Assembly (NCBI RefSeq): GCF_001447785.1 | Contig: NW_015163604.1 | Span: 1,961,613-2,025,285 of the forward strand | Source: Gekko japonicus | Lineage: Eukaryota | Length of the DNA: 63,673 nt | Reading direction: 5' to 3' | Part shown: in pieces, positions 15,203 to 60,870 of the stretch | How the letters are laid out: every line of letters begins with the position of its first letter | How positions within the stretch are numbered: position 1 is the stretch's first letter | The notes under the pieces: model-generated | Told to the model about the DNA's origin: nothing | The model's database searches: none | What the model saw: the letters and a program-made list of their open reading frames with translations, nothing else | Program-made: the position numbers and the translations under genes

Positions 15203-18134
15203 ATAATACTAATACTAATACTAATACTAATAATAATAATAATAATAATAATAATATACTTTATTGTCATTGTACATAGTACAACGAAATTAAAGATGCA
15301 ATCATTTCGGTGATTTACAACAATATTTACAACACACCATTCGCAACTGTCCCATAACAACTTAAAACCACCAATGTCACCCAATTCCAATTTCATACAG
15401 CATTTAAGGCAATAATAGTTCTTGAATAAAAACTATTTTTTAATCTATTTGTCCTTGCTTTAATTGTCCTATATCTTCTGCCCGAAGGCAGCAGTTCAAA
15501 CCGGGAATGTTCAGGATGTGACAAGTCCTGCAAAATGTTCTTTGCTTTTTTAAAACATCGAGAACTATACAATTCCTCCAGGAATGAGAGAGGGCAGCCA
15601 ATGATCTTCTGGGCTGTAATAACAACTCTCTGGAGTGCTTTCCTCTCCACAGCCATACAACTGGCAAACCAGGCACAAACACAATATGTTAAAATGCTCT
15701 CTATTGAGCAGCGATAGAAGGACATCAGTGTTTCCTCACACAAGTTATTTTTCTTTAAAAGTCTGAGAAAAAAGAGCCTCTGCTGGGCCTTCTTCACCAG
15801 AGCAATGGTGTTAGCGCTCCAGGTCAAATTTTGCTCGATAGTCACTCCCAAAAACTTAAAAGTAGCCACCCTCTCCACTTGTTCTCCACTAATAACCAGT
15901 GGCTGGATGTCCGTTTTATTCTGCCTATAGTCCACTACCAATTCCTTGGTCTTGGTGGTGTTGAGGATCAGATTATTTTCCCTANNNNNNNNNNNNNNNN
16001 NNNNNNNNNNNNNNNNNNNNNNNNNNNNNNNNNNNNNNNNNNNNNNNNNNNNNNNNNNNNNNNNNNNNNNNNNNNNNNNNNNNNNNNNNNNNNNNNNNNN
16101 NNNNNNNNNNNNNNNNNNNNNNNNNNNNNNNNNNNNNNNNNNNNNNNNNNNNNNNNNNNNNNNNNNNNNNNNNNNNNNNNNNNNNNNNNNNNNNNNNNNN
16201 NNNNNNNNNNNNNNNNNNNNNNNNNNNNNNNNNNNNNNNNNNNNNNNNNNNNNNNNNNNNNNNNNNNNNNNNNNNNNNNNNNNNNNNNNNNNNNNNNNNN
16301 NNNNNNNNNNNNNNNNNNNNNNNNNNNNNNNNNNNNNNNNNNNNNNNNNNNNNNNNNNNNNNNNNNNNNNNNNNNNNNNNNNNNNNNNNNNNNNNNNNNN
16401 NNNNNNNNNNNNNNNNNNNNNNNNNNNNNNNNNNNNNNNNNNNNNNNNNNNNNNNNNNNNNNNNNNNNNNNNNNNNNNNNNNNNNNNNNNNNNNNNNNNN
16501 NNNNNNNNNNNNNNNNNNNNNNNNNNNNNNNNNNNNNNNNNNNNNNNNNNNNNNNNNNNNNNNNNNNNNNNNNNNNNNNNNNNNNNNNNNNNNNNNNNNN
16601 NNNNNNNNNNNNNNNNNNNNNNNNNNNNNNNNNNNNNNNNNNNNNNNNNNNNNNNNNNNNNNNNNNNNNNNNNNNNNNNNNNNNNNNNNNNCAGCAAGAG
16701 TTGGTTTATAGTTAGTTATATTCTGAATCCCCTGCCACACCTGCTGCATGTCATTCGTATAGAAATTATCCTCAATCTTCTGTTTATAGCCCAGCTTAGC
16801 CTGTCGAATACCTCTTTTCAGGTTGGCTCTGGCAGAGCTATAAAGGTTCATATCTCCAGACCTAAAGGCCATATTTCTCTCCTTCAAAAGTCGCTGTACC
16901 TCTCTAGTCATCCAGGGTTTTTTATTAGGATAGACCCGTATGCACCTATCCACAGTAACACTGTCTATGCAGTGTTTAATATAGCCCAGGACTGCCCCTG
17001 TGTATTCCTCCAGGTCTTGATGATCAAAAATATCTCAGTTTGTCCTCTCAAAACAATTTTGCAACTGATGAGAAGCATCCTCAGGCCAAGTTTTTACCAT
17101 CCTTCTTTTTACAGGAGCTTGTGACCTGAGGGTAATATATGTTGGTACTAAAAACAAGGACATACGGTCCGACTGGCCCAAATGTGGAAACTGCATGGCT
17201 CTATGTTTTATGTTAGAATAGACCTTATCTAAGGTCTTATCTCCTCGGGTGGCACATTTCACATGCTGATAAAACTTAGGGAGCACAGTCTTTAATTCAG
17301 CGTGATTAAAACCCCCAGCAATAATATGCACTGCCTCAGGATATTTATCTTGGTTACTACTTATAATTTTATACAAGTGTCCCAGTGCCGATTTTGCATT
17401 AGCATCTGGTGTTATGTAAACGGCAGTTGCCATAACAACAGTAAACTCTCTCGGAAGGTAGACAGGTCTACATTTAACAGTCACATACTCTACATCCAGG
17501 GAGCAGTGACTGGCAACAATCTTTGAGTCCTTGCACCAGTTGTTGTTTACATATATGCAGAGTACCCCTCCTTTGCTCTTGCCAGAGTCCCCGCTCCTGT
17601 CACAACGATGTATGGTGCGACCCACCAATTCAATAGCCGCATCCGGTATGGAAGAATGAAGCCAGGTCTCAGTAAAAAACCAAGACACAACAGTCCCCAA
17701 CAAGCTTATTCATTGTCACTTGAAGTTTTAGTTCATCCAATTCATTACTAAGTGAACATACATTCGCAAGAAAAATGCTAGGAAGTGGTAGCTTGTTTTG
17801 GCTCCTTCGTAGCTTTACCAACACACCAGCCCGACAGCCTCGCCTTCGCCTTCTATCCCTGCGCCACCTCCTTCTCCTCCTCCTCGTGGGGGTGGTAATC
17901 CACGTGGAGCCCGGCGTCCTAGATATCTCCACCGGGATATCGTAGGAGTGGAGAGAGTCAGCTGTAACTGCTTTTTCACTCCGCATTCCCATCATTAGAA
18001 GCTCCTGCCAGCTGTAGATATTATTTGCCCAGCAGAGTGTAACACAAACAAGTAGTAACTCAAACAAAAACAGCCATACAAAACACCGAAAGAGAGAGCA
18101 CAAAGCCGCTGCGTCTATGCGCACCGCCATCTTG
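15203..18134 (-). mobile_element. Near full-length Rex1/Babar LINE (APE endonuclease plus RT), frameshifted, 707-N gap
   Basis: 5' end caagATGGCG; Arg-rich tract, then PLPSIFLANV, FTETWL, RCDRS...GG, YPNKKPWMT and LNTTKTKELVVDYR...FKFLG...KKAQQRLFFLR...FYRCSIESILTY; (TAT)n/(TATTAG)n tail. Confidence 0.9.
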
Positions 18135-28770: not shown

Positions 28771-31554
28771 CTATACCTACAGTTCTGATGCTTCAGTTTC
28801 ACTGCCTAAATTATACTGTTTGTAGACTTTTTTGCTTCATCCAGTTTCTCTCCACATTCATAAGAATCTTCTTTTTCTGGAACAAAACTTCCTTCCAGAC
28901 GCATGGTAAACTTATCAATCATTCTTTTTTTTCCATACTGAAAAACAGGATCAGCACAAAGAAACCACAGGCCACCAATTAAGCATGCCTGCTTGAGTAT
29001 TCCTCAGTTTGTGTGAGATAGGATTGCTGACTCCTGTTTGGGGATTTGGTGGGTAGTGCATAGGAAAGGCAGAATTTGGAGGGGCATAATGGCGAGAAGC
29101 AGCTATTTTATCCAGGGGTGCTGATCTCTGTAGTTTGACAATGAGTAGTAATTCTGGGAGATCTTCAGGTCCCACTTAGAGGCTGGCAACCTGTGTATAT
29201 GTTTTGAAAGAGAGATGTATAATGTAAATCAAGTGTCGTTTCCCCTCAGAATTCATTTTGGAGTCACTGCATACATTCAGGTACAGGGAATCAATCCAGC
29301 CATCTTGAAACTGGCAAAGCTGGATTGCTGACTGCTTGCCATGTCCTAAGAAACATTGCTCTCTCTTTCTAAAAAGGAATGATACTCCTCCCCTTTCTAA
29401 CAAAATGTCCATACACTGAGGTAGATTTCTCCTCAGTCCAGGAATTTCGCAACAGCCTGGCAGAGCCCAGGACATTGCTTGTAGATGAGACATGTGACTC
29501 TGAACGGCTCTTTCCGATTGGACAGCAACCTCCAGATCCAGCCATACATTTTATAACTAGCTCAAGCCAGTTTTGCCTTAACATTGTCTGACTGTGCCAG
29601 GCCCATTGTCTGATTTAAAGGTACAGACTATAGAGTGAGCCCCTCCCCCAGCAACAATCAAAAGCTTCAGGCCTACTTGAAAGTTTTACCTTTCCTGACC
29701 AGAGAAGATCTTCAGGTATGTATAATGGAGATGTGTGTGCATGGGGGAGAGGTGACGGGGGGGGGGGAGGCACTTTGCACATGCTCAGGGTCACTGCTGG
29801 AAAGTAGTATGATTTTTAGATGTCAGGAATTGGAACAGAATGTGGGATAAACTAGTCAACACTGAAGTCTCTCTTCTCCCCTCAGATAATCTATCTTGTT
29901 CTCACTTTTGCCTTTGGCAGCAAAAAATGTAAAAGATATTTAGACACCCCATTTCAAGCTTATTTTTTAGCAGTGATGTAAATTCAAGAAGGGGTTAGTT
30001 CACAGCCAGGTTAAAGGGCCTGGTCTTGGGATTGCAGGGATTTATATTGCCAAAAAAGCAATATGTTTCTGTGGATTTTTTAATCCTGCAAAATAATCAG
30101 TAGTATGGGTGTTTTCAGTCACATGTGGTGACCATCTACTTTGGTGACATTCTTCTTTAGGTGAATGGTGTTTTATATAAAAAGGTGTGTGTGTGTGTGT
30201 GTAAACTGAATTGTGCTTAGCCACACCAAGATTTAAAACAGAAGACAACAAAGATTAAAACACAGATTAAAAGTGGGAGCAAGTATTGGCCCAACAGATG
30301 AGGTTATAAACTTTTTACAGCTAAGAAAAGAGATGAAAATGAAATACAGATAAAATCTAACACTAATTGTGCAGTCCTAAACAGAGTTATATCCTTCTAA
30401 TCCCTTTGACTCCAATAGCATTAGAGTGCTCAGCATTGCACTGTAAATGGCTTGCCATTACTCCTCCATGTGTCTCTTTCTCATCATCTAATTTTCTATT
30501 TTCTTCCTTCCCTTCAAGCCAAAACTTGTATCTCCTCCTTTGCAGTTTACTCCTGCACTACTACCCTTCTATCGTCTTCTATTCCATAAATTCTGTTCTA
30601 TGAATAGTTTGCCATAGAATTGCCAATTCCGGGTTAGGAGATCCCTGGAGATTTGGGGTGGATCTTGGGGATGGCACAGTTTAGGGAGGGGAGGGAACTT
30701 TGGACAGTATAATGCCGTAGACTGCAGCCCCCAAAGCAGCCATTTTCTCCAGGAAATCTCCGGGCCAGGATGAAAATGTAATAAGTACAGAAATCAATCT
30801 GATGGCAGCTGCAGTCCTAAATATATATTTTTTAAATATTTATTTTTTTAATTGTTTTACACAAATTTTACATATTATCTTTTAACCATGCGTTTACATA
30901 GTAGTTTTTCCCCTCCCCCCTATGCTATCCCGGTGCTTTAGTCCTATATTCCCAGCCACGGGCAGCTGCAGTCCTACTTTGAAAAAGCACCTTCCTGGGA
31001 ATGAGCCCTAATGAATACAGCAGGACTTTCTTTTGATGCCTGCTCAGGATTGTTCCCTGAGAGCTTCAGCATACATCCTTTCTGCAAAACAATTTTGCAA
31101 CTTGCTTTCTGGCTCACACGTGGCTGTACTAGTCATGTTGTGGCTTCAAAGGAAACAAACCGGCACCTGTGCTTGATTGCTGGGAGTGATTCTCATTTAC
31201 TGCAGATGACCAGATAGATGACTATTTAGGTGTGTGAAAATTCCCTTTTTCTATATAAAGTTTTATTGTCCTTCATTCCAGCTGAGTAGTTCTAGTATTC
31301 ATAGTACACCATAGGTGTGCAGCAAGGGGGACTTGCTGCTGTGTTGAATGGAACCGTAAATTGCCATTTTACTGTATAAAAAGGACTATTGGTTCTGGCT
31401 TTCCTTCGTTGAAAATGATTTGTTATAGAAATAGCCTCACTTTCTGGTTTGTATACAATTCCTTAGCCATCTTGCTTATAAATCTGGACAGCTGTACTGT
31501 ATTGAAACGTTTCCATTTCTCGTACAATTGCTGTGCTTCTCCATTGTTTCCTAG

Positions 31555-31600
31555 GAGTGGTGAGAATGACTAACCTTCATGAAGTCATAACTGGATACAG
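31555..31600 (+). other. Candidate upstream exon of SPTSSB (46 nt)
   Basis: Pyrimidine tract tgcttctccattgtttcctAG before it and donor CAG|GTAATA after it. ATG at 31566 is in frame with the CDS if spliced to 34300. Confidence 0.35.
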
Positions 31601-32948
31601 GTAATAAAGAATGAGTTACTAATGTGAAGTTGGCTTGCACAAAGCACATGGAGCATTTATGAACATCTGCCAATTAATTTGGTCTGTAGGTATAAATGCA
31701 CAACTTCTCCTGTTTGATAAACCTTTTGTGTCTTTGCTTATATGTAGCAGGAAACATTAAAGGATGGATCCCATGGATCTGTTTTGCTAGAAAGCAGGGG
31801 CGCTTTCCTTTGGCACCAGTAGCCTTCCTTCTGATGTATGAAGCCTCTTGTGGGAAGGCTCCTTACACCAAAGGAAAGCGCCCCTGCTAGTGGGCTGGAT
31901 CCACAGGATCTAACCCAAGGCTGATATATGAATACCCATCTTACAATGCATTCTATCATATATTTTACAACACATCTGTCCCTGAGGCTTGCTATGGATG
32001 GGTCTACAAAGAGCATATTGCACGGAATGTACTTTTTAGTAAACCTATTCACACAGCATCTACACTTCTGCTGTGATGTGTCAGCATACAACTAGAAGTG
32101 CAGGAAGTAATGAGGATGATGACATTTGAGTGACGTTTTGCCATAGAGACAATAGCATATTAAATTGACGTCTAACCCTGAATGTCTAGTATCAAAATTA
32201 AAGGTGCCACTTGGATGACACAACCGTGATAAATGCAGGAAGTCACCCTGTTCCCATTATCTCTATGATAGAAGACTTTTTTGCCTGGCATGAGACAGAC
32301 CCTGAATGGCTGGATTCGAATGGAATCCAGAAATGGCAATCTGATTTAAGTGGGACCAGAATAGCTCTCATAACTTTCCTCATATAGATTCTGCCAACTG
32401 TGCTGACCCTGTTTGCCTTGGTGCCACATGGGGGTTGAAATATTGTCAGGGACTCTTGGTTAAACTCTTGGTTCTTTAATGTAGCTAGTTTGATGTATGA
32501 TAAGGTAATACAGAATCCTAAAACAGGTATTGTTATGTCCTTTAGACTTTAGTGACCTTTCAACACCTCAGTAACTGGCCTCAAGTTATAGAGGTGCAAA
32601 TAAACTAGGCAGCATAGCCTTTAATGGCCTGGGGCATGAACAAATCCGCTTTGTATGCAAACAAAGCTGCTGTATTCACTTTGCTTGCAAAAAATGTGCA
32701 CTAGTATTGCCTGTGCCCTTCACGTTTCATTACGATTTCACACTTAACTAAAAACATAGGGTTGAGTCCAACCAGCTCTTCAGCTGGTGACAGAGGAGGG
32801 ACCATGAAAAAAGACTGGCCATCTGGGACAGAGGCTGTAGTCAGAAGAGGAATTGGGGGGGGGGGAGAAACTGATTGGATACAACTCATGTCTCACTGAG
32901 GAAACACTGGTGCCATATTAATTTACACGTCTAAGCTGTGCTGATTTG

Positions 32949-33555
32949 GGCTGCTGTCACACACACTAAATAATCCACTTTCATTCCACTTTCAGTGCAC
33001 TTTCCAACTGGATTTTTACTGTGTGAACTGGCAAAATACAGTTGGAAAGTACATTGAAAGTGGATTATTTCGGCTGAGTTCAGACTGGCAGTTTGAAGCG
33101 GGAGGGAGTCGTGGCAAAAAAGAGCCGGAACAAACTGTTCCAGGTTTTCCCTTTCACACTGCAGCGACTGATGCGGGAGCATACCGGGAGGAGGCGCAAG
33201 GGAGTGTTCACACTGTTGGCCCGGAGGCATGGCTGTGAGGCGCAGCTTTCTTTTTTTGTAATCTGGAGATATGTGCCGGAGCGCATGAGCGCACAAGAAA
33301 AATGCGGCTTTTGGCGTTCACACTTTGTTGGTGCGGGATAATCGCGCTTTCCAGGGTTTGCTCCCACTTTCACCAGGTATCTTTTAAACTCAGGAGCGAA
33401 GCGTTACAAGATGGGTTGAATACGGGTGTGGAACGCCGGACAGATGTGCCTGTGTGAACGGCCCATTTAATCCAGTTATGGAACGTTTCTGAAACGTGTG
33501 TATATCGGGGCAAACTGCCAGTCTGAACTCGGCCTTAGAGTGTGTGACCGCAGCC
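32949..33555. mobile_element. Nested PIF/Harbinger-like palindromic MITEs (inner element 33072-33534)
   Basis: Inner 24-bp TIRs ggctgagttcagactggcagtttg / caaactgccagtctgaactcggcc with 3-bp flanks ttc / tta. Outer TIRs ggctgctgtcacacac / gtgtgtgaccgcagcc. Confidence 0.8.
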
Positions 33556-33763
33556 TTTTTTTGTTTATGGGGGGGAGGACTGCCTTAAACTGGCTTTTCA
33601 CATAAATTGTTATCCATTTCTTCTTTCTGTTTATGTGTTCCATCTCAGTTTTGTTCTTAGAGGGCCAGTTGGTGGGAGGGCAACTAATTGAGTGTGGCAG
33701 TTCAAAAATAGAGTTCTTAGATGTTTTTGCACTGGCTATAGATCACCATCCTAGCATTGGCAT

Positions 33764-33969
33764 CAGTGTTCCCTCTAAGCTGAGTTAGTGTGAGCTAGCT
33801 CACAGTTTTTGAGCCTCTGGCTCACACATTTTTGTCTTGGCTCAGGAAGGATGGCTCTAGAGCAAACTAGTTTATCCAGCAGCCAAATCTCTTGCTTACA
33901 ACTTTAATGCCAGTAGCTCACAAAGTAGAATTTTTGCTCACAAGAGTCCACAGCTTAGAGGGAACATTG
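33764..33969. mobile_element. hAT MITE (CARTGTTCCCTC family)
   Basis: Perfect TSD attggcat. Confidence 0.92.
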
Positions 33970-34324
33970 ATTGGCATGTGTCTTTATTTGTCAAAGTATT
34001 GGAGAATCCAAAAGCCCCTGTCTAGTTGATGGGAATTCATCGGGCCCCCATTAACAGGAAATACCCAGAACCAAAGAATCTCAGCTATGTCAGGAGATCA
34101 GTTTGTAGCACTCTGTAAACTTTGTAAATCTTTGCTTGAGTTCAGTTCTCAGTCTAGCTTTTGTAGTGGCTGGTTCTGATGAATTGTGCTCACTGTATAT
34201 TATTGGTAGTAACATTTTTTTAAAAACCCAAACAATGTTCTACCTTACTCTTTCCTCAGCTTGGTTTAAACTTTCTTTCATACTTTGTTGATGTTATAGG
34301 ACAAACTTCCAGAAGCAACGATTA

Positions 34325-34546
34325 ATGGCGATGAAAGCAGCAAAGCGTATAAAGGATTCTTGTTACTGGTTTTATTTTCAGTACCTGCTGATCAGCTGCT
34401 GTGTTGACCTGGAGCCCTGGGAACAAATAGTGATACATGTTTTTTCTGCCACTACTATTACCATGTTGGTCTTCACAGCTTATGTGTTCATTCCAATCCA
34501 TTTACGTCTGGCTTTTAGGTTCTTCCTGCAGCTACTGGTCAAGTAG
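34325..34546 (+). CDS. SPTSSB: Serine palmitoyltransferase small subunit B-like protein (73 aa, single coding exon)
   Basis: ORF MAMKAAKRIKDSCYWFYFQYLLISCCVDLEPWEQ...MLVFTAYVFIPIHLRLAF carries the ssSPT motifs W-x-Y-x-QY, ISCC-x-x-LEPWE and TAYVFIPIH-x-RLA typical of SPTSSB. Acceptor ttatag at 34298-34299 precedes it. It lies tail-to-tail with NMD3, as SPTSSB does in other amniotes. Orthologue versus divergent paralogue is unresolved. Confidence 0.88.
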   Translation: MAMKAAKRIKDSCYWFYFQYLLISCCVDLEPWEQIVIHVFSATTITMLVFTAYVFIPIHLRLAFRFFLQLLVK

Positions 34547-34921
34547 CCAGAGACAACAGTTCTCAGTGTTTGCCATGATGGTCCTGGGGGTTCTCTATGT
34601 AATTTTGATGTGTTTGTGTAAATAGAGTTATTTAGAAGTCTGAGCCTGTTTCCCACCCTTTGTAGTCCCTTGGAAATTGCTAATTTTGACAACAGATTTT
34701 TGCAACAGTGAGTCATGGCGGCAGGAAGGAAGCCACAAGTCACTAGTCTTCCACCATTTTATTTAAAAAAATTACCCACAGAATTGTTATGGGTAGAAAT
34801 TCCAACCGTCACTGATGTAACATGGGAATAGGGAAGTTCTATTGCGGCCCAACTAAACTTAATGGTCTTTCTTTGAGCCTACCGAAGTAGTAACAAAAAA
34901 AACTGTGCGGGAGTTTGTGCT

Positions 34922-34927
34922 AATAAA
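34922..34927 (+). terminator. Candidate SPTSSB polyadenylation signal
   Basis: AATAAA about 375 nt after the stop codon; no transcript evidence. Confidence 0.4.
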
Positions 34928-37062
34928 TTTGAAATATTAATCAAAATGATTTCATAAAAAAGAGTGTACAATATTTGCATCACATATCAAATGCAAGTGA
35001 AGACGGTGATCTCCGGAATGTGCTGCCGTTTCAACACAAGTCTTCTTCTGAACAGTGATGTATACATGTGGTGTCTCTCTATTTCATTTCAACTGATTCA
35101 TCATCAACAATTTCATGGATCTCTCAGGATTGTCTAATACATTGTAGAAACAGTTTCTAGAAAAGCCTTGTTGTTGGGACTGGACCACTTATGACTAAAG
35201 ATGGGGCACTGCTCGTTTGCATGCTTAACTATCTGCCCATCAGAAGGCTAGGCTGGACCCTCTTCCCTGGGATGCTTGCCGGTCTGCAGTAGCAGGGAGG
35301 AAGAGCAACAACACTTGCCACTTCTGGCCATGAGAAGTGCCGTTATGCAACCAGAATATGCCATTCAACAGGCAAAGATCACCTTTGGCTCTGTAAATTA
35401 ATCTACAGCTTAACTTCTGTACCCTGTAAGGGGTAAATTAACACAAGTTATACTTTCTTTCAGATGAGGCTCCTTGCACTCATGCCTTGCCTCGGTTTTC
35501 AGCTTCACATTGGGGTCAGGGGATGTTCATAAACTCTGCATTCCTATGGAACAGATCCCTTAGTTAATCCAAAATTGACATATGTGTTGGCTCATGCCCA
35601 GGTTCATCTTGTTTATTGGCATAGTGTCTTTGGAATTCATTGCTTCCAGATATTTGTTGGATCCAGCTCATCTTGCTCTTTACGGAGTGTCTCAAGGCAT
35701 GTTTATATGTGTACGTTTGTTCCAATTAAAGTAACATTTCATGGAGATTCCAGAGAGGTGGCTGTGTCAGTCTGTCCCTGCAAAATTAAATAGGAGACTT
35801 GTGGCACCTTAAAGACTAACAAAAATGTATCTTAGCTTAAGATTTCATGGCCTTGAATCTACTTAAACTTGTTGCTTGTCTTTAAGCTGCTGCTAGATTT
35901 CTCTTAGGTCTTATTTTACTTCTCTTCTTTCACTGGGTTGGATCCCCTGAACCTGTTTGCTGGCTGTTATGCTTTTTGTCAACACAAAGGGGCCTTCCCT
36001 GATGCAAGAAAGAGCTTCTTATGTCAGTGAATGGTTTCTTGCACTGGATGAAAACACCACTAGTGGAACTGCCCTAAGAAAAGGTAGTCCTTGGCTGAAC
36101 TACAGTGACCAACAGCACACAATGATCAGATACATCAAAAAGAGGCTTTCCTGCTAGAAAATTGTGCATTTTGCCTTTGAGATTGACATCTTATGCCCAT
36201 GACTTCTGAGCACCTATTACCTGAACTTCCTTCCCCTTCTGACCCCAGAATGTTATATGCAATTAATTCTGTTGCTGGAAGTTGTGTTGATCACAATGGG
36301 TACTTATCCAGCTCTTGGGCTCTGGTTGGTTTGTTTTGGGAGGGATGAGTGGCCAGCAAGTACCATTTAGTGGATCATATATCTGCTAAAGCAAAAATGT
36401 CCACAGCCTGAAAATAAACTCTGGAAATTGTGTCACTTTCCTGTGTTTATACCAACAACTCTGAGACGGCTTACCAGTCATTCTCAGAACTTGGCAGCTG
36501 CGGGCGCCAGCATACATTTTGGGAAATGGCATGCACCCTAGGCTGTCTGGATGCCACAACACACCCTACATTTTGCCAGTTTTCCTTCTGGGAACTATAG
36601 GCAAATATCTAGCAAAAATAAACAAACAGGAAATGAAGGATGGGAGGGAGGAATGAAAATCGTCTCAAGTTTTATGAGTAAATAAGCTTTTGAACTTTAA
36701 CTACCCAATATATTTTACACACCAAACTAACAGCTTTTCAAAAACATGCATAGGATATTACAGAAAAAATGGCCAAGGCAGCAAGAAGTGTGGCAGTTGT
36801 GCTGCGAGTGTATAAAACTGCAACATCAGTGCCTCGGTCAATCTTCAGTAGGTGTAAGAGATTCAAATCAGTCCTCAGCTCTTAAGCATGTTCAACTGTA
36901 CATGTAAGCAGTTCCCAAATGTGGTGCTTGAGGGTGCCATTAAAACATAAGACAAGCCCTGCTGGATCAGACCAACAGTCCATCTGGTCTAGTATTCCCA
37001 GTCTCACACAGTGGCCAACCAGTTACTCTGGAGGGTCAACAATAAACCCTAATAAATAGACT

Positions 37063-37340: not shown

Positions 37341-38454
37341 TAGGGCACAGAAGCTGCGGCCTTTCCCTGATGTTGCTTCCTGGCACTGATATTTAGAAGT
37401 TTACTAGTTGTCAGTATGTTTCCTGATGTCTATTTCTTGCTTGATGGTCGTGAACAGAACAGAAAAACAAAACGGGGAACAAAACAAAAAATCAATGCCA
37501 GCTTTTCTTTCTCTANNNNNNNNNNNNNNNNCCTAAGAACCAGAGATATTTCAGAAGAACCAGGAGGTTTCACCATCTCATTTAAAGGAAGTGCCCATTC
37601 AGAAGCAGCTGCCTCCATCACAGGAGGACTCTTGGCTTGGAACCGTCTGTTTTATGACCCCCCCCCCCCCAAAAAGGAGCCATTTTGTGGTGTCACATAC
37701 TTTTTCTTTATCAAAATCACCAAAGCAGTAACAAGGTTGGGAACACCTAGTTCAGAACTTCTCCATGGAACTGGTAATCTATCAAAGACCCAGGTACCAT
37801 CTCCATACTTAGTTATATATACAGTCTTAGAGGGTCCACCTCATAGAAAAAATGGTTCCCACTTGGCTCAGTGTTTGAAGGGCACTTAAAAGACATCGCA
37901 AAACATCTAGTATTACATTTCTGGGAGAATTCATGGCCAAGTATAGATCTGAGTCCATTCCCAGAGCACTCTACGATCTATTGGCCTGCACTACCCTTCT
38001 GGTTTAAGGTGAATTCTTTGGTCAATATAATTTTAGTCACTCACCACCTTTCTTGAATTGGTCAACACATAGGAGTTTGAGTTCTTTGAGCACTGTGGAT
38101 TCCTATATACGCAGTTTACATCAGCCTTAGATTATGTGTAATATATTAGAGAGGCATGCTATTGTGAGGTTAACAAGTCACATGGAGCTTACAAAAATAA
38201 GAACATTTCACGATGCAAGATACTGGGCCAGACCATTGATCACCTTTTGATTTTATTGTCTACTCTGACTCTTCTGCAGTTCTCCTGTTTATCTGGAGAT
38301 TCTGCATTTGAATCTAAACCCATGCATATTTACCATACTGCTCTACCAGCAGAGCTCTGTTTTCACACGGAATTTTGAACACTTCGCCTCAAAGTACACA
38401 AAGGATCCAGAAACAAATTTGAATGGATGACAAATTCAGTGATAGTGTTACATA

Positions 38455-47287: not shown

Positions 47288-49563
47288 ATGTAAACCAAGC
47301 TGGTCCAGGGATTACAAGCATGATGCAAATGTCCCCTTTAAATACACCAAAGTAACAACAGTTCTAACAAGGAGACTTACTCCTTCCAGAAACATCCCAA
47401 GTCCTTCCTATGTGGGCTGGTATTTATACCCTGTTCACACGTTACAGTGAACACACATACATCCTGCCTGTGTGTAATCTGTTTGTAAAAAAGAGGCAAT
47501 GTGCAATGCCTTTACAAATAAGAATTGAGAACCAGCAACTGGGTAAATGTGAGGTCTAAATCACGCATTCAACTGTACAAACATGAAAAGTAACTTAAGA
47601 GTTACTCAGTGCACATATAATCAAGTGTACACCATACACATATTGTACATGTGTTCACTTGTAATTTCTGAACAGGAGTAAAGTGAACTTCAATCAGGCT
47701 AAAGATCTGTATTTACTGCAATATTAATATATCTATTTTTATGGCCTAATTTCAAATATTCTGTCATGCATCTCAAGGCTCTGAGAGCTTTAGCCGTAGA
47801 CCACAGGTTGATATATATTTGGAATGGTCTTACTAGGAAGCTATTGCTTGGATCTTCTGGACCACAAAGTCTCTTCACCTGCCACTGCATTAGGACAAGG
47901 GGATGATTCTTGTTTCATTTCAAGTGGGGATTTTGCAAAACCCAACAGAAATTAATCCATTTATTACAATGCCTTGTTGCTCACACCAATCCATAAGGCA
48001 CAGTACCTCCACTAAGAGGTTGGGAAGATCCACTGTAAGGGGCTCAGCTTGAATTCCCAAGAGCTCTACTTCCTTCAGTGGCTCTTGCCATTTACCTCCC
48101 CTACATGAACTATCATGGGGAGGAGGGAAGAGATGGAGAGAGGTAAGACATAACTGGGCAGAAAAAGGAGGGCACAGGGCAGGAAAAGTGGTTATCTTCA
48201 GGTAATAAGGAATGGAGGAGTATTACAAAGAAGGGCCCACATGCAGAGGTACAGTGCAAAACCCAGCATGCAAAATGCACAGAGATATGCAGATGGGTGA
48301 AATGCAGAAAATAAACATCTGTCAACGAATAATAATCATATGCCCATGTGCAGCCTGGGGGTTGAACATTGACCTGAACTTGTTAATGAATATTAGAATT
48401 ATTGAATATTAGAATTCACCCCCTCCTTCAACGAAGACCCATTAGATAGTAGGGTTCCCCTCTTATTTTGGACTTAGTTGTTTTAATAGGCACCTCCTTT
48501 TACAACCTAAGTGTCAAGGGGATCTGAAACTTGGAGAGTCTCACAAAGGCAACTTGGGTTCAGCCATGACATTGGAAAATCCCAAGAAAGAAGAGGAAGA
48601 GTGTGCTGGAATTAGAAACTGATTCAGTGCAATCTACCCCAGCTCAGCGGCACATCGTTCTCAATAACAAAGGACTTTTCAACACTCGAGATATGGCCCA
48701 ATATCCTGACATACCACAGAGGTGTCTGCCCAGTCCAAGGAAGTTGCTATTTCATTAACCAATTCCCAGTTCTTCTTTTCCATTTTTTACTCAATCAAGA
48801 AGAGCCCTCATTAATTTGCCCTCCATTCTGTTTCTGGAGCTATCAACTCATCCAAACTTTTGTGCCCATGCTCACTTCAACCTAATTAAAGTATGCTAAT
48901 TAAAGTATGCTGCCTCACCCAGGTTCTTTATGCCCATGCAGATTTGGCTCAGTTTGACAGCAGTTAACTTCAAACCAGCCAGTGAGAGACAAACTTTTTT
49001 ATCCTGACCCAATCCAAAGCCAGGATAGCCAAACACCACCCACCCTGGGAATCTTCAGTCCATAAAAGAAGAATCCCATGCCCTAGCAAATTGTTCCTTA
49101 GATCTCAAGTCAAGATTTCTGATGGTCAGAACTCTGGTTTGCTTCTGAGAAGCCCTGATACACTCTGCAAGATCCCCCCTCCCCTTCCTCCTCAATATTC
49201 TGCCTCCTTGGACTTCAGCTGCATCTGCCCCCAGACCACTCCAGGCCTTAAGCCCCGGATTTAAGGCTGTGTGTCCCTTCCTCTGTATAGTGACCTGGAA
49301 CTCCTTGGTGGACTCCCACCTAAATACTAACCAGGGCTGACTCTGCTTAGCTTCCAAGATCTGATGAGACTGGGCTAGCCTGGGCCATCCAGGTTGACTC
49401 CCTAGGTTGGCCTTTCATAATTCTCAGTTTCACAGTTCCTCTCTTTGAGAAAACCCTTTCCATCAGTGATCAAAAACATAGGCCTCAACTGAGACAATTA
49501 TTGAAAGCAACACACAAACATTTAATTGAACATCAACTGGAAGTAGCACAAAACAGTACAAAC

Positions 49564-59129: not shown

Positions 59130-60870
59130 TAAGAACATAAGAGACGCCAATGTTGGATCAGGCCAAAGGCCCATCCAGTCCAACACTCTGTGTCACACAG
59201 TGGCCAGGAATACCAGGTGCCATCAGGAGGTCCACCAGTGGGGCCAGGACATTAGAAGCCCTCCCACTGTTGACCCCCCCCCAAGCACCAAGAAGACAGA
59301 GCATCACTTGCCCCAGAGCCCCTATCTATACCTTGTGGCTAATAGCCACTGATGGACCTCTGCTCCATATGCTTATCTAATTCCCTTTTGAAGCCGTCCA
59401 TGCTTGTAGCCGCCACCACTTCCTGTGGCAGTGAATTCCATGTGTTAATCACTCTTTGGATGAAGAAGTACTTCCTTTTACCCGTTCTAACCCGACCACT
59501 CAGCAATTTCATTGAGTGCCCACAAGTTCTTATATTGTGAGAAAGGGAGGAAAGTACTTCTTCCTCTACCTTCTCTATCTCATGCATAATACTGTAAGCC
59601 TCTATCATGTCACCCCTCAGTCGTCATTTCTCCAAGCTAAAGAGCCCTAACCTCTTTAACCTTTCTTCATAGGGAAAGTGTTCCAACCCCTTAATCATTT
59701 TAGTTGTCCTTTTCTGCATCTTTTGCAATGCTATAATATCTTTTTTGAGGTACAGTGACCAGANNNNNNNNNNNNNNNNNNNNNNNNNNNNNNNNNNNNN
59801 NNNNNNNNNNNNNNNNNNNNNNNNNNNNNNNNNNNNNNNNNNNNNNNNNNNNNNNNNNNNNNNNNNNNNNNNNNNNNNNNNNNNNNNNNNNNNNNNNNNN
59901 NNNNNNNNNNNNNNNNNNNNNNNNNNCAAGAGCCCCCCCGCCCACCCTGCCCAGGGATGGTTCCTTGGTGCAAAAGGATACCTGCTCACCAGCTGGGGAA
60001 AAGGTCCCTTCTGAGAGCACATTCCCCTTATCCTCAGCACGGTGCCCTGTTTCTCCTTGACTCCCATGCTCCCTGACAGCGGCGGGGCTGCCAGATCCAG
60101 AGTGGGACATATCTAACAAGTCCCCGAGAGTCTTTTCTGTGCGCCTAACTGACTGTCTCTGCTTCTCCACGTCAGCCACCTTGGCCTCAAGGGAGCAAAC
60201 ACGTTCCCTGAGAACCAGGAGGTCCTTGCACCGAGCACACCCCCAAGACTTCTGTCCAGTGGGCAGATAGTCATACATGTGACACTCTGTGCAAAACACT
60301 GGATAGCCCCCAACCCCCTGCTGGCATTCTGGCTTCATAATTCTTTTAAAATAAGTAAATATAATCCCCCTTTTTAAACCCTTTGTATTTATGTGGTTTT
60401 TCTTGTCGAAGTCAACTTACCTTACGGGGAAGACAAAGAGCCTAGGGCCTTGGCTTTCTGGCTCTTCTTGGGCTTCTTACAGAACCCCTAGTCTAAGAGT
60501 CCCTAGGCTAAGAGCCACAGGCAAAGAGCCCTTTAGCTCACCCTTCGGCTTGTGCTTCTGGCAAAGTGCTTCCTTAAATAGAGGCCTCCCCCAGCAGAGG
60601 GCAGGGCACCAGCTATTCAAATTCACCCAGGCACTCAATCACAGGCAAACAATGCCCCTTCCTCTTCCTCTCAATCACAGTCTAACAATGCCCTTTCCTC
60701 TCCCTCTCTCAAGCAGCCAGGACTCTGCAACAACTCTAATCACTTTCACAAACTCCGAAACAGTCCTGCCACACAATATCCTCAGCTGAATCCCCTCAGT
60801 TGAAAGCAAGTAAAAAAACACTCACCCCTCTAGCAGCTCTGTCTCTTGCTCCTGCTCAGACCACAGAGCT
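59130..60870 (-). mobile_element. Probably full-length CR1 LINE, middle lost in the assembly gap (59764-59926)
   Basis: ORF1 start MKPECQQGVGGYPVFCTECHMY...CARCKDLLVLRERVCSLEAKV; ORF2 end [15 protein letters not shown]...RTCGHSMKL...FFIQRVINTWNSLPQEVV; cttatgttctta tail. The 5' boundary is approximate. Confidence 0.9.

What the first reader, a model, noticed from the sequence alone, without database searches (positions are those of the whole stretch)
34406..34408. SPTSSB-like protein has Asp at the acyl-CoA chain-length selector position
Seen: the codons AGC TGC TGT GTT GAC CTG GAG CCC TGG GAA give SCCV-D-LEPWE. Established: the residue just before LEPWE (Met25/28 in SPTSSA, Val25 in SPTSSB) plugs the acyl-chain tunnel of serine palmitoyltransferase and sets the C16- versus C18-CoA preference. 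Inference: an acidic residue here (GAC, one change from Val GTC) could redirect SPT to unusual acyl-CoAs and give atypical sphingoid bases, for example for squamate skin or gecko pad lipids. It could instead make a non-activating subunit. The His of PIH (mouse Stellar site) and the Thr of TAY are retained, so the ORF does not look decayed.
Basis: partly seen in the sequence, partly recalled or inferred. Interest (0 to 1): 0.8.

Follow-up and report, generated by a model that had tools for sequence, protein, structure and literature searches.

The report
Squamate SPTSSB paralogue with acidic selector
This gecko gene is a second, reptile- and bird-only copy of a small subunit of the enzyme that starts sphingolipid synthesis, and in every lizard and snake checked it has an acidic residue at the one position known to set fatty-chain length, a variant I found no functional study of.

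Summary
GAC at 34406-34408 is codon 28 of an intact 73-aa ORF (34325-34546, +). The ORF matches Pfam SPT_ssu-like, and Asp28 aligns without gaps to Met28 of human SPTSSA.

It is not an assembly error. All 16 other squamate relatives fetched (geckos, skinks, cordylid, teiid, lacertid, varanid, agamid, snakes) have Asp there, or Glu in Pogona. The neighbouring residue varies freely.

The gene is not the species' SPTSSB. Geckos and other squamates also keep a canonical 80-aa SPTSSB with Val25. The window gene belongs to the automatically annotated "SPTSSB-like" (chicken symbol SPTSSBL) group, also found in birds and turtles, where the selector is Leu. It lies on the same chromosome as SPTSSB in several species. 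I found no functional study of it.

The squamate form also has a conserved N-terminal extension from an upstream exon (31555-31600) and usually lacks the C-terminal tail.

Most likely it is a working third SPT small subunit whose carboxylate changes acyl-CoA selection; the direction of change is unknown. The link to skin or toe-pad lipids has no support.

The parts
31555..31600 (+). Upstream coding exon. ATG at 31566. It encodes MTNLHEVITGY plus the first two bases of an Arg codon. The acceptor AG is at 31553-31554 and the donor GT at 31601-31602.
   Evidence: tblastn of the Heteronotia model P0002 gives 16 of 16 identities at 31554-31601. The sequence and splice signals were read. The same extension is found in models from geckos, a skink, a cordylid, snakes and Pogona.
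31601..34299 (+). Intron between the two coding exons (GT...AG, phase 2).
   Evidence: Donor CAG|GTAATA and acceptor ...gttatAG|G. The frame runs AG|G = Arg, then TNFQKQRL, then Met1 of the ORF.
34300..34546 (+). Main coding exon up to the stop. It holds the 73-aa ORF 34325-34546 (SPT_ssu-like core), preceded in frame by RTNFQKQRL.
34406..34408 (+). GAC = Asp28, the chain-length selector position (equivalent to Met28 of SPTSSA and Val25 of SPTSSB).
   Evidence: The column is 12 D + 1 E in 13 squamate sequences, while position 27 takes 5 different residues.
34409..34423 (+). LEPWE motif (residues 29-33), the kink between helix 1 and the membrane helix.
   Evidence: E30, P31 and W32 are nearly invariant and E33 invariant across 47 family members. 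The AF2 model has helix 2-27, a break at 28-30 and helix 31-72, mean pLDDT 93.
34475..34501 (+). TAYVFIPIH (residues 51-59), including the His equivalent to the mouse Stellar site.
   Evidence: T51, Y53, F55, I56 and P57 are invariant and H59 is present in 12 of 13 squamates.
34544..34546 (+). TAG stop. It sits where canonical SPTSSB has the Gln of its C-terminal tail (..GSQPEST..), so the protein lacks that tail.
   Evidence: Most squamate copies end at the same place (..QLLVK and similar). Podarcis P0010 has Gln there and keeps a tail.
34547..34570 (+). The in-frame stretch after the stop reads PETTVLSV, which resembles the canonical tail PESTVSLMN. It is a possible remnant of the lost tail.
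   Evidence: One search compared. The resemblance is short and could be chance.

Best explanation
The codon is real. It belongs to the gecko copy of a second SPTSSB-type gene, annotated automatically as SPTSSB-like (SPTSSBL in chicken), which squamates, birds and turtles carry in addition to canonical SPTSSB. The gene is intact and conserved. It has two coding exons and keeps all family-defining residues. It codes for a helix-kink-helix protein like SPTSSA. Shown: its identity, its paralogy, and the fixation of a carboxylate (Asp, or Glu in Pogona) at the selector position across Squamata. Inferred: it binds SPTLC1-SPTLC2/3 as SPTSSA and SPTSSB do, placing residue 28 at the far end of the acyl tunnel of the large subunit. 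A carboxylate cannot pack against a terminal methyl group as Met, Leu or Val can. My best guess is that it turns aside to pair with a polar or basic group of the large subunit. That would leave the tunnel end at least as open as with Val, giving C18 or longer acyl-CoA use, or a different chain-length spectrum. The fact that only D and E are tolerated, never N, S, A or G, says that the charge itself is used. The direction of the specificity change is not known.
For: GAC and the ORF are confirmed. Pfam PF11779 hit above cut-off. Gap-free alignment to human SPTSSA puts D28 opposite M28. Seven of seven word-search hits are squamate SPTSSB-like proteins with Asp. An exhaustive HMMER search gave 87 representatives, with D or E only in squamate copies. 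Canonical Val25 SPTSSB is present in seven squamates including four geckos. Squamate SPTSSB-like proteins form a clade (98/95*) and bird plus turtle copies another (99/91*). Both nest within amniote SPTSSB after the mammal split. All copies form one clade at 85/83 when hagfish is left out. Three derived states are shared by all three groups: position 35 Ser to hydrophobic, 65 Glu to Gln/Arg, 68 Ser to Leu. The two genes lie on contigs of identical length in Hemicordylus, Bubo, Coturnix, Calypte and others. In chicken both lie in chr9:22-23 Mb (PMC7402339). Site constraint: 12 D + 1 E against 5 residues at position 27, on a clade that is more diverged than canonical SPTSSB. The role of the position comes from PMC6148460 and PMC12376012.
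Against: There is no biochemical, structural or expression evidence for this paralogue in any species. Only two chicken papers in the held library mention SPTSSBL, both in passing. Read laying failed, so neither transcription nor the splice junction was seen in this genome. The runs that hold the exon are only guessed to be RNA. The paralogue evolves faster than SPTSSB, at 60-68% against 75-84% identity for the same species pairs. In turtles and colubroid snakes the LEPWE motif itself is altered, so binding to SPT may not be conserved everywhere. The complex could not be modelled with the tools at hand, so the orientation of Asp28 is inferred by homology only.
Confidence: 0.6

Rival explanations
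1. It is a non-activating or inhibitory decoy subunit. It still docks on SPTLC1-SPTLC2/3, but the charged residue blocks or destabilises the hydrophobic tunnel end. It would then lower SPT activity, or restrict it to short chains, in the tissues where it is expressed.
For: An acidic side chain sits at a site that is otherwise V, M, L or I in 266 of 289 family members. The C-terminal tail is lost, and in SPTSSA the C-terminus contacts ORMDL3 (PMC12376012). Divergence is greater than for SPTSSB.
Against: The 33-residue core is reported to suffice for activation and the termini to be dispensable (PMC6148460). All nearly invariant core residues are kept. Nothing indicates that a charge at a kink near the membrane surface must abolish function.
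Confidence: 0.17
2. It is an ordinary tissue-specific ssSPT isoform, and Asp28 is functionally near-neutral for chain length. The residue would be kept for folding or helix-end reasons, not for substrate choice.
For: The AF2 model places D28 in the three-residue break between the helices, where polar residues are common. Asp is between Val and Leu in size (my own knowledge).
Against: Single substitutions at this position change specificity in SPTSSA. Birds hold Leu here in 107 of 111 copies within an invariant SY-L-MEPWEK context and squamates hold D or E, which suggests the site is selected in each lineage.
Confidence: 0.18
3. It is an artefact: an assembly or sequencing error at one base (true codon GTC), or a decaying pseudogene or retrocopy.
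For: A single A-for-T change would produce it. No reads could be laid.
Against: The same acidic residue occurs in 16 independent squamate sequences. The gene has an intron with good splice signals, so it is not a retrocopy. The frame is open and 14 of 73 columns are invariant across Squamata. Fifteen runs from several studies hold at least half of the sampled words of the stretch.
Confidence: 0.02

Closest known systems
SPTSSB (ssSPTb), canonical vertebrate small subunit B of serine palmitoyltransferase
   Same: Same Pfam family. About 55-61% identity between paralogues. Same LEPWE and TAYVFIPIH motifs, and the main coding exon has the same layout. The window gene nests inside the amniote SPTSSB clade.
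   Different: The selector is Asp instead of Val. FFS becomes FFL, and there are other derived changes. The C-terminal tail is cut by a stop, and an N-terminal extension comes from an upstream exon. Canonical SPTSSB exists separately in geckos, so this gene is not its orthologue.
Bird and turtle SPTSSB-like (chicken SPTSSBL)
   Same: Probably the same paralogue. It groups with the squamate copies in the best tree (85/83), shares three derived residues and is linked to SPTSSB on the same chromosome.
   Different: The selector is Leu, with birds reading SY-L-MEPWEK in 107 sequences. The tail is retained, and the fetched models show no conserved N-terminal extension. The turtle motif is altered to MVPCE. 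A common origin is not proven: the AU test does not reject a separate squamate duplication (p 0.56).
SPTSSA (ssSPTa), solved in human SPT-ORMDL3 complexes (e.g. 7k0i, 6m4n)
   Same: Gap-free alignment over residues 5-67. The predicted two-helix shape with a kink at LEPWE is consistent with what is reported for SPTSSA.
   Different: About 30-36% identity. Met28 plugs the tunnel and limits substrates to C16, whereas here the residue is Asp.
Engineered selector mutants of ssSPTa (M25G and related), reported in the Harmon et al. 2013 work as summarised in PMC6148460
   Same: A single change at the same position re-sets acyl-CoA preference.
   Different: The mutant named in the review I could read is M25G. 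It mentions no acidic substitution. The primary paper was not held.

Membership tests
SPT small subunit family (Pfam PF11779, SPT_ssu-like) | Profile match above the curated cut-off | tested here: met
   36 bits against a cut-off of 29.8, residues 14-62 on profile positions 5-53 of 54.
SPT small subunit family (Pfam PF11779, SPT_ssu-like) | Conserved core residues (W15, Y17, Q19, E30, P31, W32, E33, M47, Y53, F55, P57, H59, F67 in window numbering) | tested here: met
   All are present in the window ORF. They are invariant or at least 90% conserved in a 47-sequence alignment of A, B and B-like proteins.
SPT small subunit family (Pfam PF11779, SPT_ssu-like) | N-terminal helix, kink, and one long hydrophobic helix | tested here: met
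   AF2 model with mean pLDDT 93: helix 2-27, break 28-30, helix 31-72. Hydropathy is highest over residues 40-60. This is prediction only.
SPT small subunit family (Pfam PF11779, SPT_ssu-like) | Binds and activates the SPTLC1-SPTLC2/3 heterodimer | not testable with these tools
   This needs co-expression and an enzyme assay. No complex modelling tool was available.
SPTSSB orthologue | Val at the selector (Val25) | tested here: not met
   Asp28. All 25 canonical SPTSSB proteins in the per-group table have Val, and V is the state in 120 of 289 fetched proteins.
SPTSSB orthologue | It is the only SPTSSB-type gene of its lineage, or groups with canonical SPTSSB of the same taxa | tested here: not met
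   Geckos and other squamates have a separate 80-aa canonical SPTSSB. The window protein groups with the squamate B-like clade (98/95*).
Sauropsid SPTSSB-like paralogue (SPTSSBL) | Groups with annotated SPTSSB-like proteins of squamates | tested here: met
   92% identical to Heteronotia binoei SPTSSB-like. Clade support is 98/95*.
Sauropsid SPTSSB-like paralogue (SPTSSBL) | Common origin with the bird and turtle SPTSSB-like genes | tested here: inconclusive
   One clade at 85/83 without hagfish, and three shared derived residues. With hagfish included the node is unresolved. The AU test does not reject squamate B-like plus squamate B as one clade (p 0.56).
Sauropsid SPTSSB-like paralogue (SPTSSBL) | Linked to SPTSSB on the same chromosome | tested here: inconclusive
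   Seen in other species as equal contig lengths (Hemicordylus, Bubo, Coturnix, Calypte, Neopsephotus, Pezoporus) and in chicken chr9:22-23 Mb. The 63.7-kb window holds no second copy, and its wider neighbourhood could not be fetched.

The most novel reading that the evidence does not exclude
Squamates have used, for roughly 200 million years, a third class of SPT small subunit whose carboxylate at the tunnel end re-programmes serine palmitoyltransferase. It would either accept acyl-CoAs that the Met, Val or Leu subunits exclude (unusual length, or a polar or branched omega end), giving lineage-specific sphingoid bases, or act as a built-in brake on SPT. Birds and turtles would use the sister form with Leu. 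This would make SPTSSBL an undescribed layer of control over sphingolipid backbone diversity in sauropsids.
Probability: 0.3. Interest if true: 0.75.

Novelty: new variant of a known kind. Interest (0 to 1): 0.55.

Why it matters
The residue before LEPWE is the best understood single-residue switch of sphingoid-base chain length, and only hydrophobic residues have been discussed there. Finding a lineage-wide carboxylate at that switch gives sphingolipid biochemists a ready test of how the tunnel end reads the acyl chain. The carboxylate sits in a paralogue that reptiles and birds keep beside SPTSSA and SPTSSB, and I found no study of that paralogue. It also shows that sauropsids have three ssSPT genes, not the two of the mammalian textbook picture. 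This matters when interpreting bird and reptile lipidomes and the automatic gene names, since many B-like proteins are labelled plain "SPTSSB".

Tried and rejected
I therefore have no read-level base call, splice junction or expression level.

I could not get DNA of the other squamate copies, so there is no dN/dS, no comparison of the post-stop stretch or of the upstream exon at nucleotide level, and no synteny.

(3) Foldseek against PDB and VIA-align wide with the AF2 model gave only generic two-helix or coiled-coil matches, not SPTSSA. This is uninformative for so small a fold. The sequence alignment carries the residue equivalence.

(4) Pfam scans of the ten longest other ORFs in the window found nothing, so the window gives no neighbouring gene for synteny.

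(5) The primary mutagenesis paper (PMID 23426370, PMC3617257) is not held. I relied on two reviews.

(6) A literature search for unusual sphingoid bases in snake or lizard epidermis returned nothing relevant.

(7) Assembly error was rejected because of cross-species conservation. Retrocopy was rejected because of the intron. Orthology to SPTSSB was rejected because canonical SPTSSB exists in geckos.

(8) No search or fold was run on the joined two-exon model. Only the single-exon ORF was used, by reference. The joined translation was merely read in a script.

Full report
**Observation.** Window 34406-34408 is GAC. The ORF matches Pfam PF11779 (SPT_ssu-like) at 36 bits against a curated cut-off of 29.8. 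A phmmer search of PDB sequences aligns residues 5-67 without gaps to residues 5-67 of human SPTSSA (7k0i_C, E 7.5e-12; 6m4n_D). This places Asp28 opposite Met28. Met25 of ssSPTa and Val25 of ssSPTb dictate acyl-CoA specificity, M25G shifts use to C20, and a 33-residue core suffices for activation (PMC6148460). In the cryo-EM structures the side chain of Met28 of SPTSSA occupies the substrate tunnel of SPTLC2 next to the acyl tail, and Val in SPTSSB would let longer chains in (PMC12376012).

**Gene anatomy.** The ORF is preceded in frame by RTNFQKQRL back to a good splice acceptor (..gttatAG|G, exon start 34300). NCBI models of relatives carry an N-terminal extension. tblastn of the Heteronotia model finds its first part at 31554-31601 with 16 of 16 identities. 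Reading that stretch shows an exon at 31555-31600 with acceptor AG at 31553-31554. The ATG is at 31566 in a purine -3 context, and the donor is CAG|GTAATA. The joined frame reads MTNLHEVITGY-R-TNFQKQRL and then the 73-aa core (this was a reading in a script only, and no search or fold was run on the joined model). The extension is nearly the same in two other geckos, a skink, a cordylid and three snakes, and is recognisable in Pogona. It is more conserved than residues 1-9 of the core, so it is probably translated. The stop TAG (34544-34546) lies where canonical SPTSSB has the Gln of its tail ..GSQPEST... Most squamate copies end there, so they lack the tail. An AlphaFold2 model built on a 47-sequence alignment (mean pLDDT 93) gives helix 2-27, a break at D28-L29-E30, and helix 31-72. 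The selector therefore sits in the kink, as expected from SPTSSA.

**What the gene is.** The word search with the ORF returned seven proteins. All were squamate, the named ones were called "SPTSSB-like" or SPTSSB, and all carried Asp at the site. An exhaustive HMMER search of 1.84 billion representatives gave 87 hits. Reading the selector column gave V 42, M 27, D 12, L 7, I 3, E 1, A 1 and P 1. Cluster look-ups named the groups.
- The D and E proteins are squamate: Heteronotia, Euleptes, Lerista, Hemicordylus, Salvator, Podarcis, Varanus, Pogona (Glu), Python, Pantherophis, Laticauda, Pseudonaja, Protobothrops and Crotalus.
- The L proteins are bird and turtle "SPTSSB-like".
- The V proteins are canonical SPTSSB.
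- The M group includes the SPTSSA-like proteins (these representatives were not named).

A second search seeded with crocodile SPTSSB showed that squamates also have a canonical 80-aa SPTSSB with Val25. It is present in Gekko, Eublepharis, Paroedura and Sphaerodactylus, and also in Hemicordylus, Anolis sagrei and Pseudonaja, with a shorter 70-aa model in Erythrolamprus. The window gene is therefore a paralogue, not a mutated SPTSSB. A profile search added more than 100 bird copies. Over all 289 proteins fetched the column is V 120, L 115, M 27, D 15, E 1, I 4, G 2, A 1 and P 1, with 2 unmatched. No acidic residue occurs outside the squamate paralogue.

**Origin.** In a maximum-likelihood tree rooted on the SPTSSA-like proteins, the squamate B-like proteins form a clade (98/95*) and the bird plus turtle B-like proteins another (99/91*). 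Both lie inside amniote SPTSSB after the mammal split (98/91*). With the long hagfish row left out, all B-like proteins are one clade at 85/83. Three derived states are shared by all three B-like groups against every canonical SPTSSB: position 35 Ser to a hydrophobic residue, 65 Glu to Gln/Arg, and 68 Ser to Leu. The AU test, however, does not reject a tree in which squamate B-like proteins group with squamate SPTSSB (p 0.56). A single duplication in the sauropsid stem is therefore likely but not proven. The two genes are linked. Both proteins come from contigs of identical length in Hemicordylus, Bubo, Coturnix, Calypte, Neopsephotus and Pezoporus. In chicken, SPTSSB and SPTSSBL both fall in chr9:22-23 Mb with NMD3, OTOL1, B3GALNT1 and PPM1L (PMC7402339). 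The window itself holds only one copy, and none of the ten longest other ORFs scanned matched a Pfam family.

**Constraint.** The paralogue is more diverged than SPTSSB. Identity is 60-68% against 75-84% for matched squamate pairs, and branches are longer. Even so, 14 of 73 columns are invariant across 13 squamates. Column 28 is 12 D + 1 E, while column 27 takes five residues and column 29 takes three. Only the carboxylate is tolerated, which argues that the charge, not just the size, is under selection. In birds the same column is Leu, within an invariant SY-L-MEPWEK context in 107 sequences. Each lineage therefore holds its own selector residue.

**Mechanism.** Shown: family membership, paralogy, intact structure, and lineage-wide conservation of an acidic selector. 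Inferred by homology: the protein docks on SPTLC1-SPTLC2/3 with residue 28 at the far end of the acyl tunnel. A carboxylate cannot pack against a terminal methyl group. I think it most likely pairs with a polar or basic group of the large subunit and leaves the tunnel end open at least as far as Val does. That would change the chain-length spectrum, probably towards C18 or longer or towards unusual acyl-CoAs. The direction is a guess. Rival readings:
- an inhibitory or non-activating decoy (0.17);
- a near-neutral structural residue (0.18);
- an artefact (0.02).

No tool here could model the complex or test activity.

**Expression.** The look-up of sequencing runs lists 15 runs of the same organism that hold at least half of the sampled words of 34290-35100. 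Nine small runs from three studies hold 88-100%, but their RNA label is only a guess. Expression in this animal is therefore unverified. Chicken SPTSSBL is reported as a differentially expressed gene in muscle (PMC10970468).

**Comparison with what is known, and novelty.** The gene exists in databases only as an automatic "SPTSSB-like" annotation, and is often mislabelled SPTSSB. A full-text search for SPTSSB-like, SPTSSBL, ssSPTc or SPTSSC found just the two chicken papers, neither functional. The 2025 review I read states that there are two small-subunit isoforms. An acidic selector conserved across Squamata, in a third ssSPT gene of sauropsids, is to my knowledge undescribed. It is a new variant of a known kind, not a new kind. 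That is confirmed as to paralogy and rate, but the lineage is at least Squamata and probably Sauropsida, not geckos.

**Verdict.** Interest is moderate (0.55). This is a clean, testable natural variant at a well-understood switch, with no functional data yet.

Noticed in passing
window 31555-31600 and 34300-34324: There is a conserved N-terminal extension (MTN[LF][HQ]E[VI]ITGYRT[NT]FQKQR[LF]) encoded by an upstream exon plus what would be 5'UTR in canonical SPTSSB. It is shared by geckos, a skink, a cordylid, snakes and, more loosely, Pogona. It is more conserved than the first nine residues of the core. Its function is unknown.
   Followed up: partly
window 34544-34570: The stop TAG replaces the Gln codon of the canonical C-terminal tail. 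The next eight codons still read PETTVLSV, close to canonical PESTVSLMN, and the frame stays open for 25 codons. This may be a remnant, chance, or a hint of stop read-through. Podarcis has Gln at this codon and keeps a tail.
   Followed up: partly
proteins P0005, P0009, P0011, P0196, P0197, P0198 (colubroid snakes): In colubroid snakes the almost invariant Pro of LEPWE is replaced by His (FEHWE), or by Arg in one viperid contig (FERWE). That puts a basic residue three positions after the Asp. Python keeps LEPWE.
   Followed up: no
proteins P0059, P0191, P0192, P0277 (turtles): Turtle SPTSSB-like proteins have Glu one position before the selector and a degraded motif (SE-L-MVPCEK or LVPCEK; PIH becomes TMQ). 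The turtle copy may have changed function or be decaying.
   Followed up: no
proteins P0182, P0188 (Anolis carolinensis): This is an 80-aa SPTSSB-type protein with Gly at the selector and LLPWE instead of LEPWE (CY-G-LLPWEQ), with the canonical tail kept. Anolis sagrei has a normal Val copy. It may be a further, recent divergent copy in A. carolinensis.
   Followed up: no
window 49282-49392 (-): There is a full-length match to 5S rRNA (RF00001) at 41.2 bits against a gathering score of 38, E 4.2e-05. It could be a 5S pseudogene or a 5S-derived SINE head, far from any rDNA context.
   Followed up: no
I worked beside them and did not send them to any search tool afterwards.
   Followed up: no
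window 15985-16691, 37516-37531, 59764-59926: These are runs of N (707, 16 and 163 bases). They explain the long all-frame ORFs around 15.4-17.7 kb and 59.6-60.3 kb. I left them as they are.
   Followed up: no
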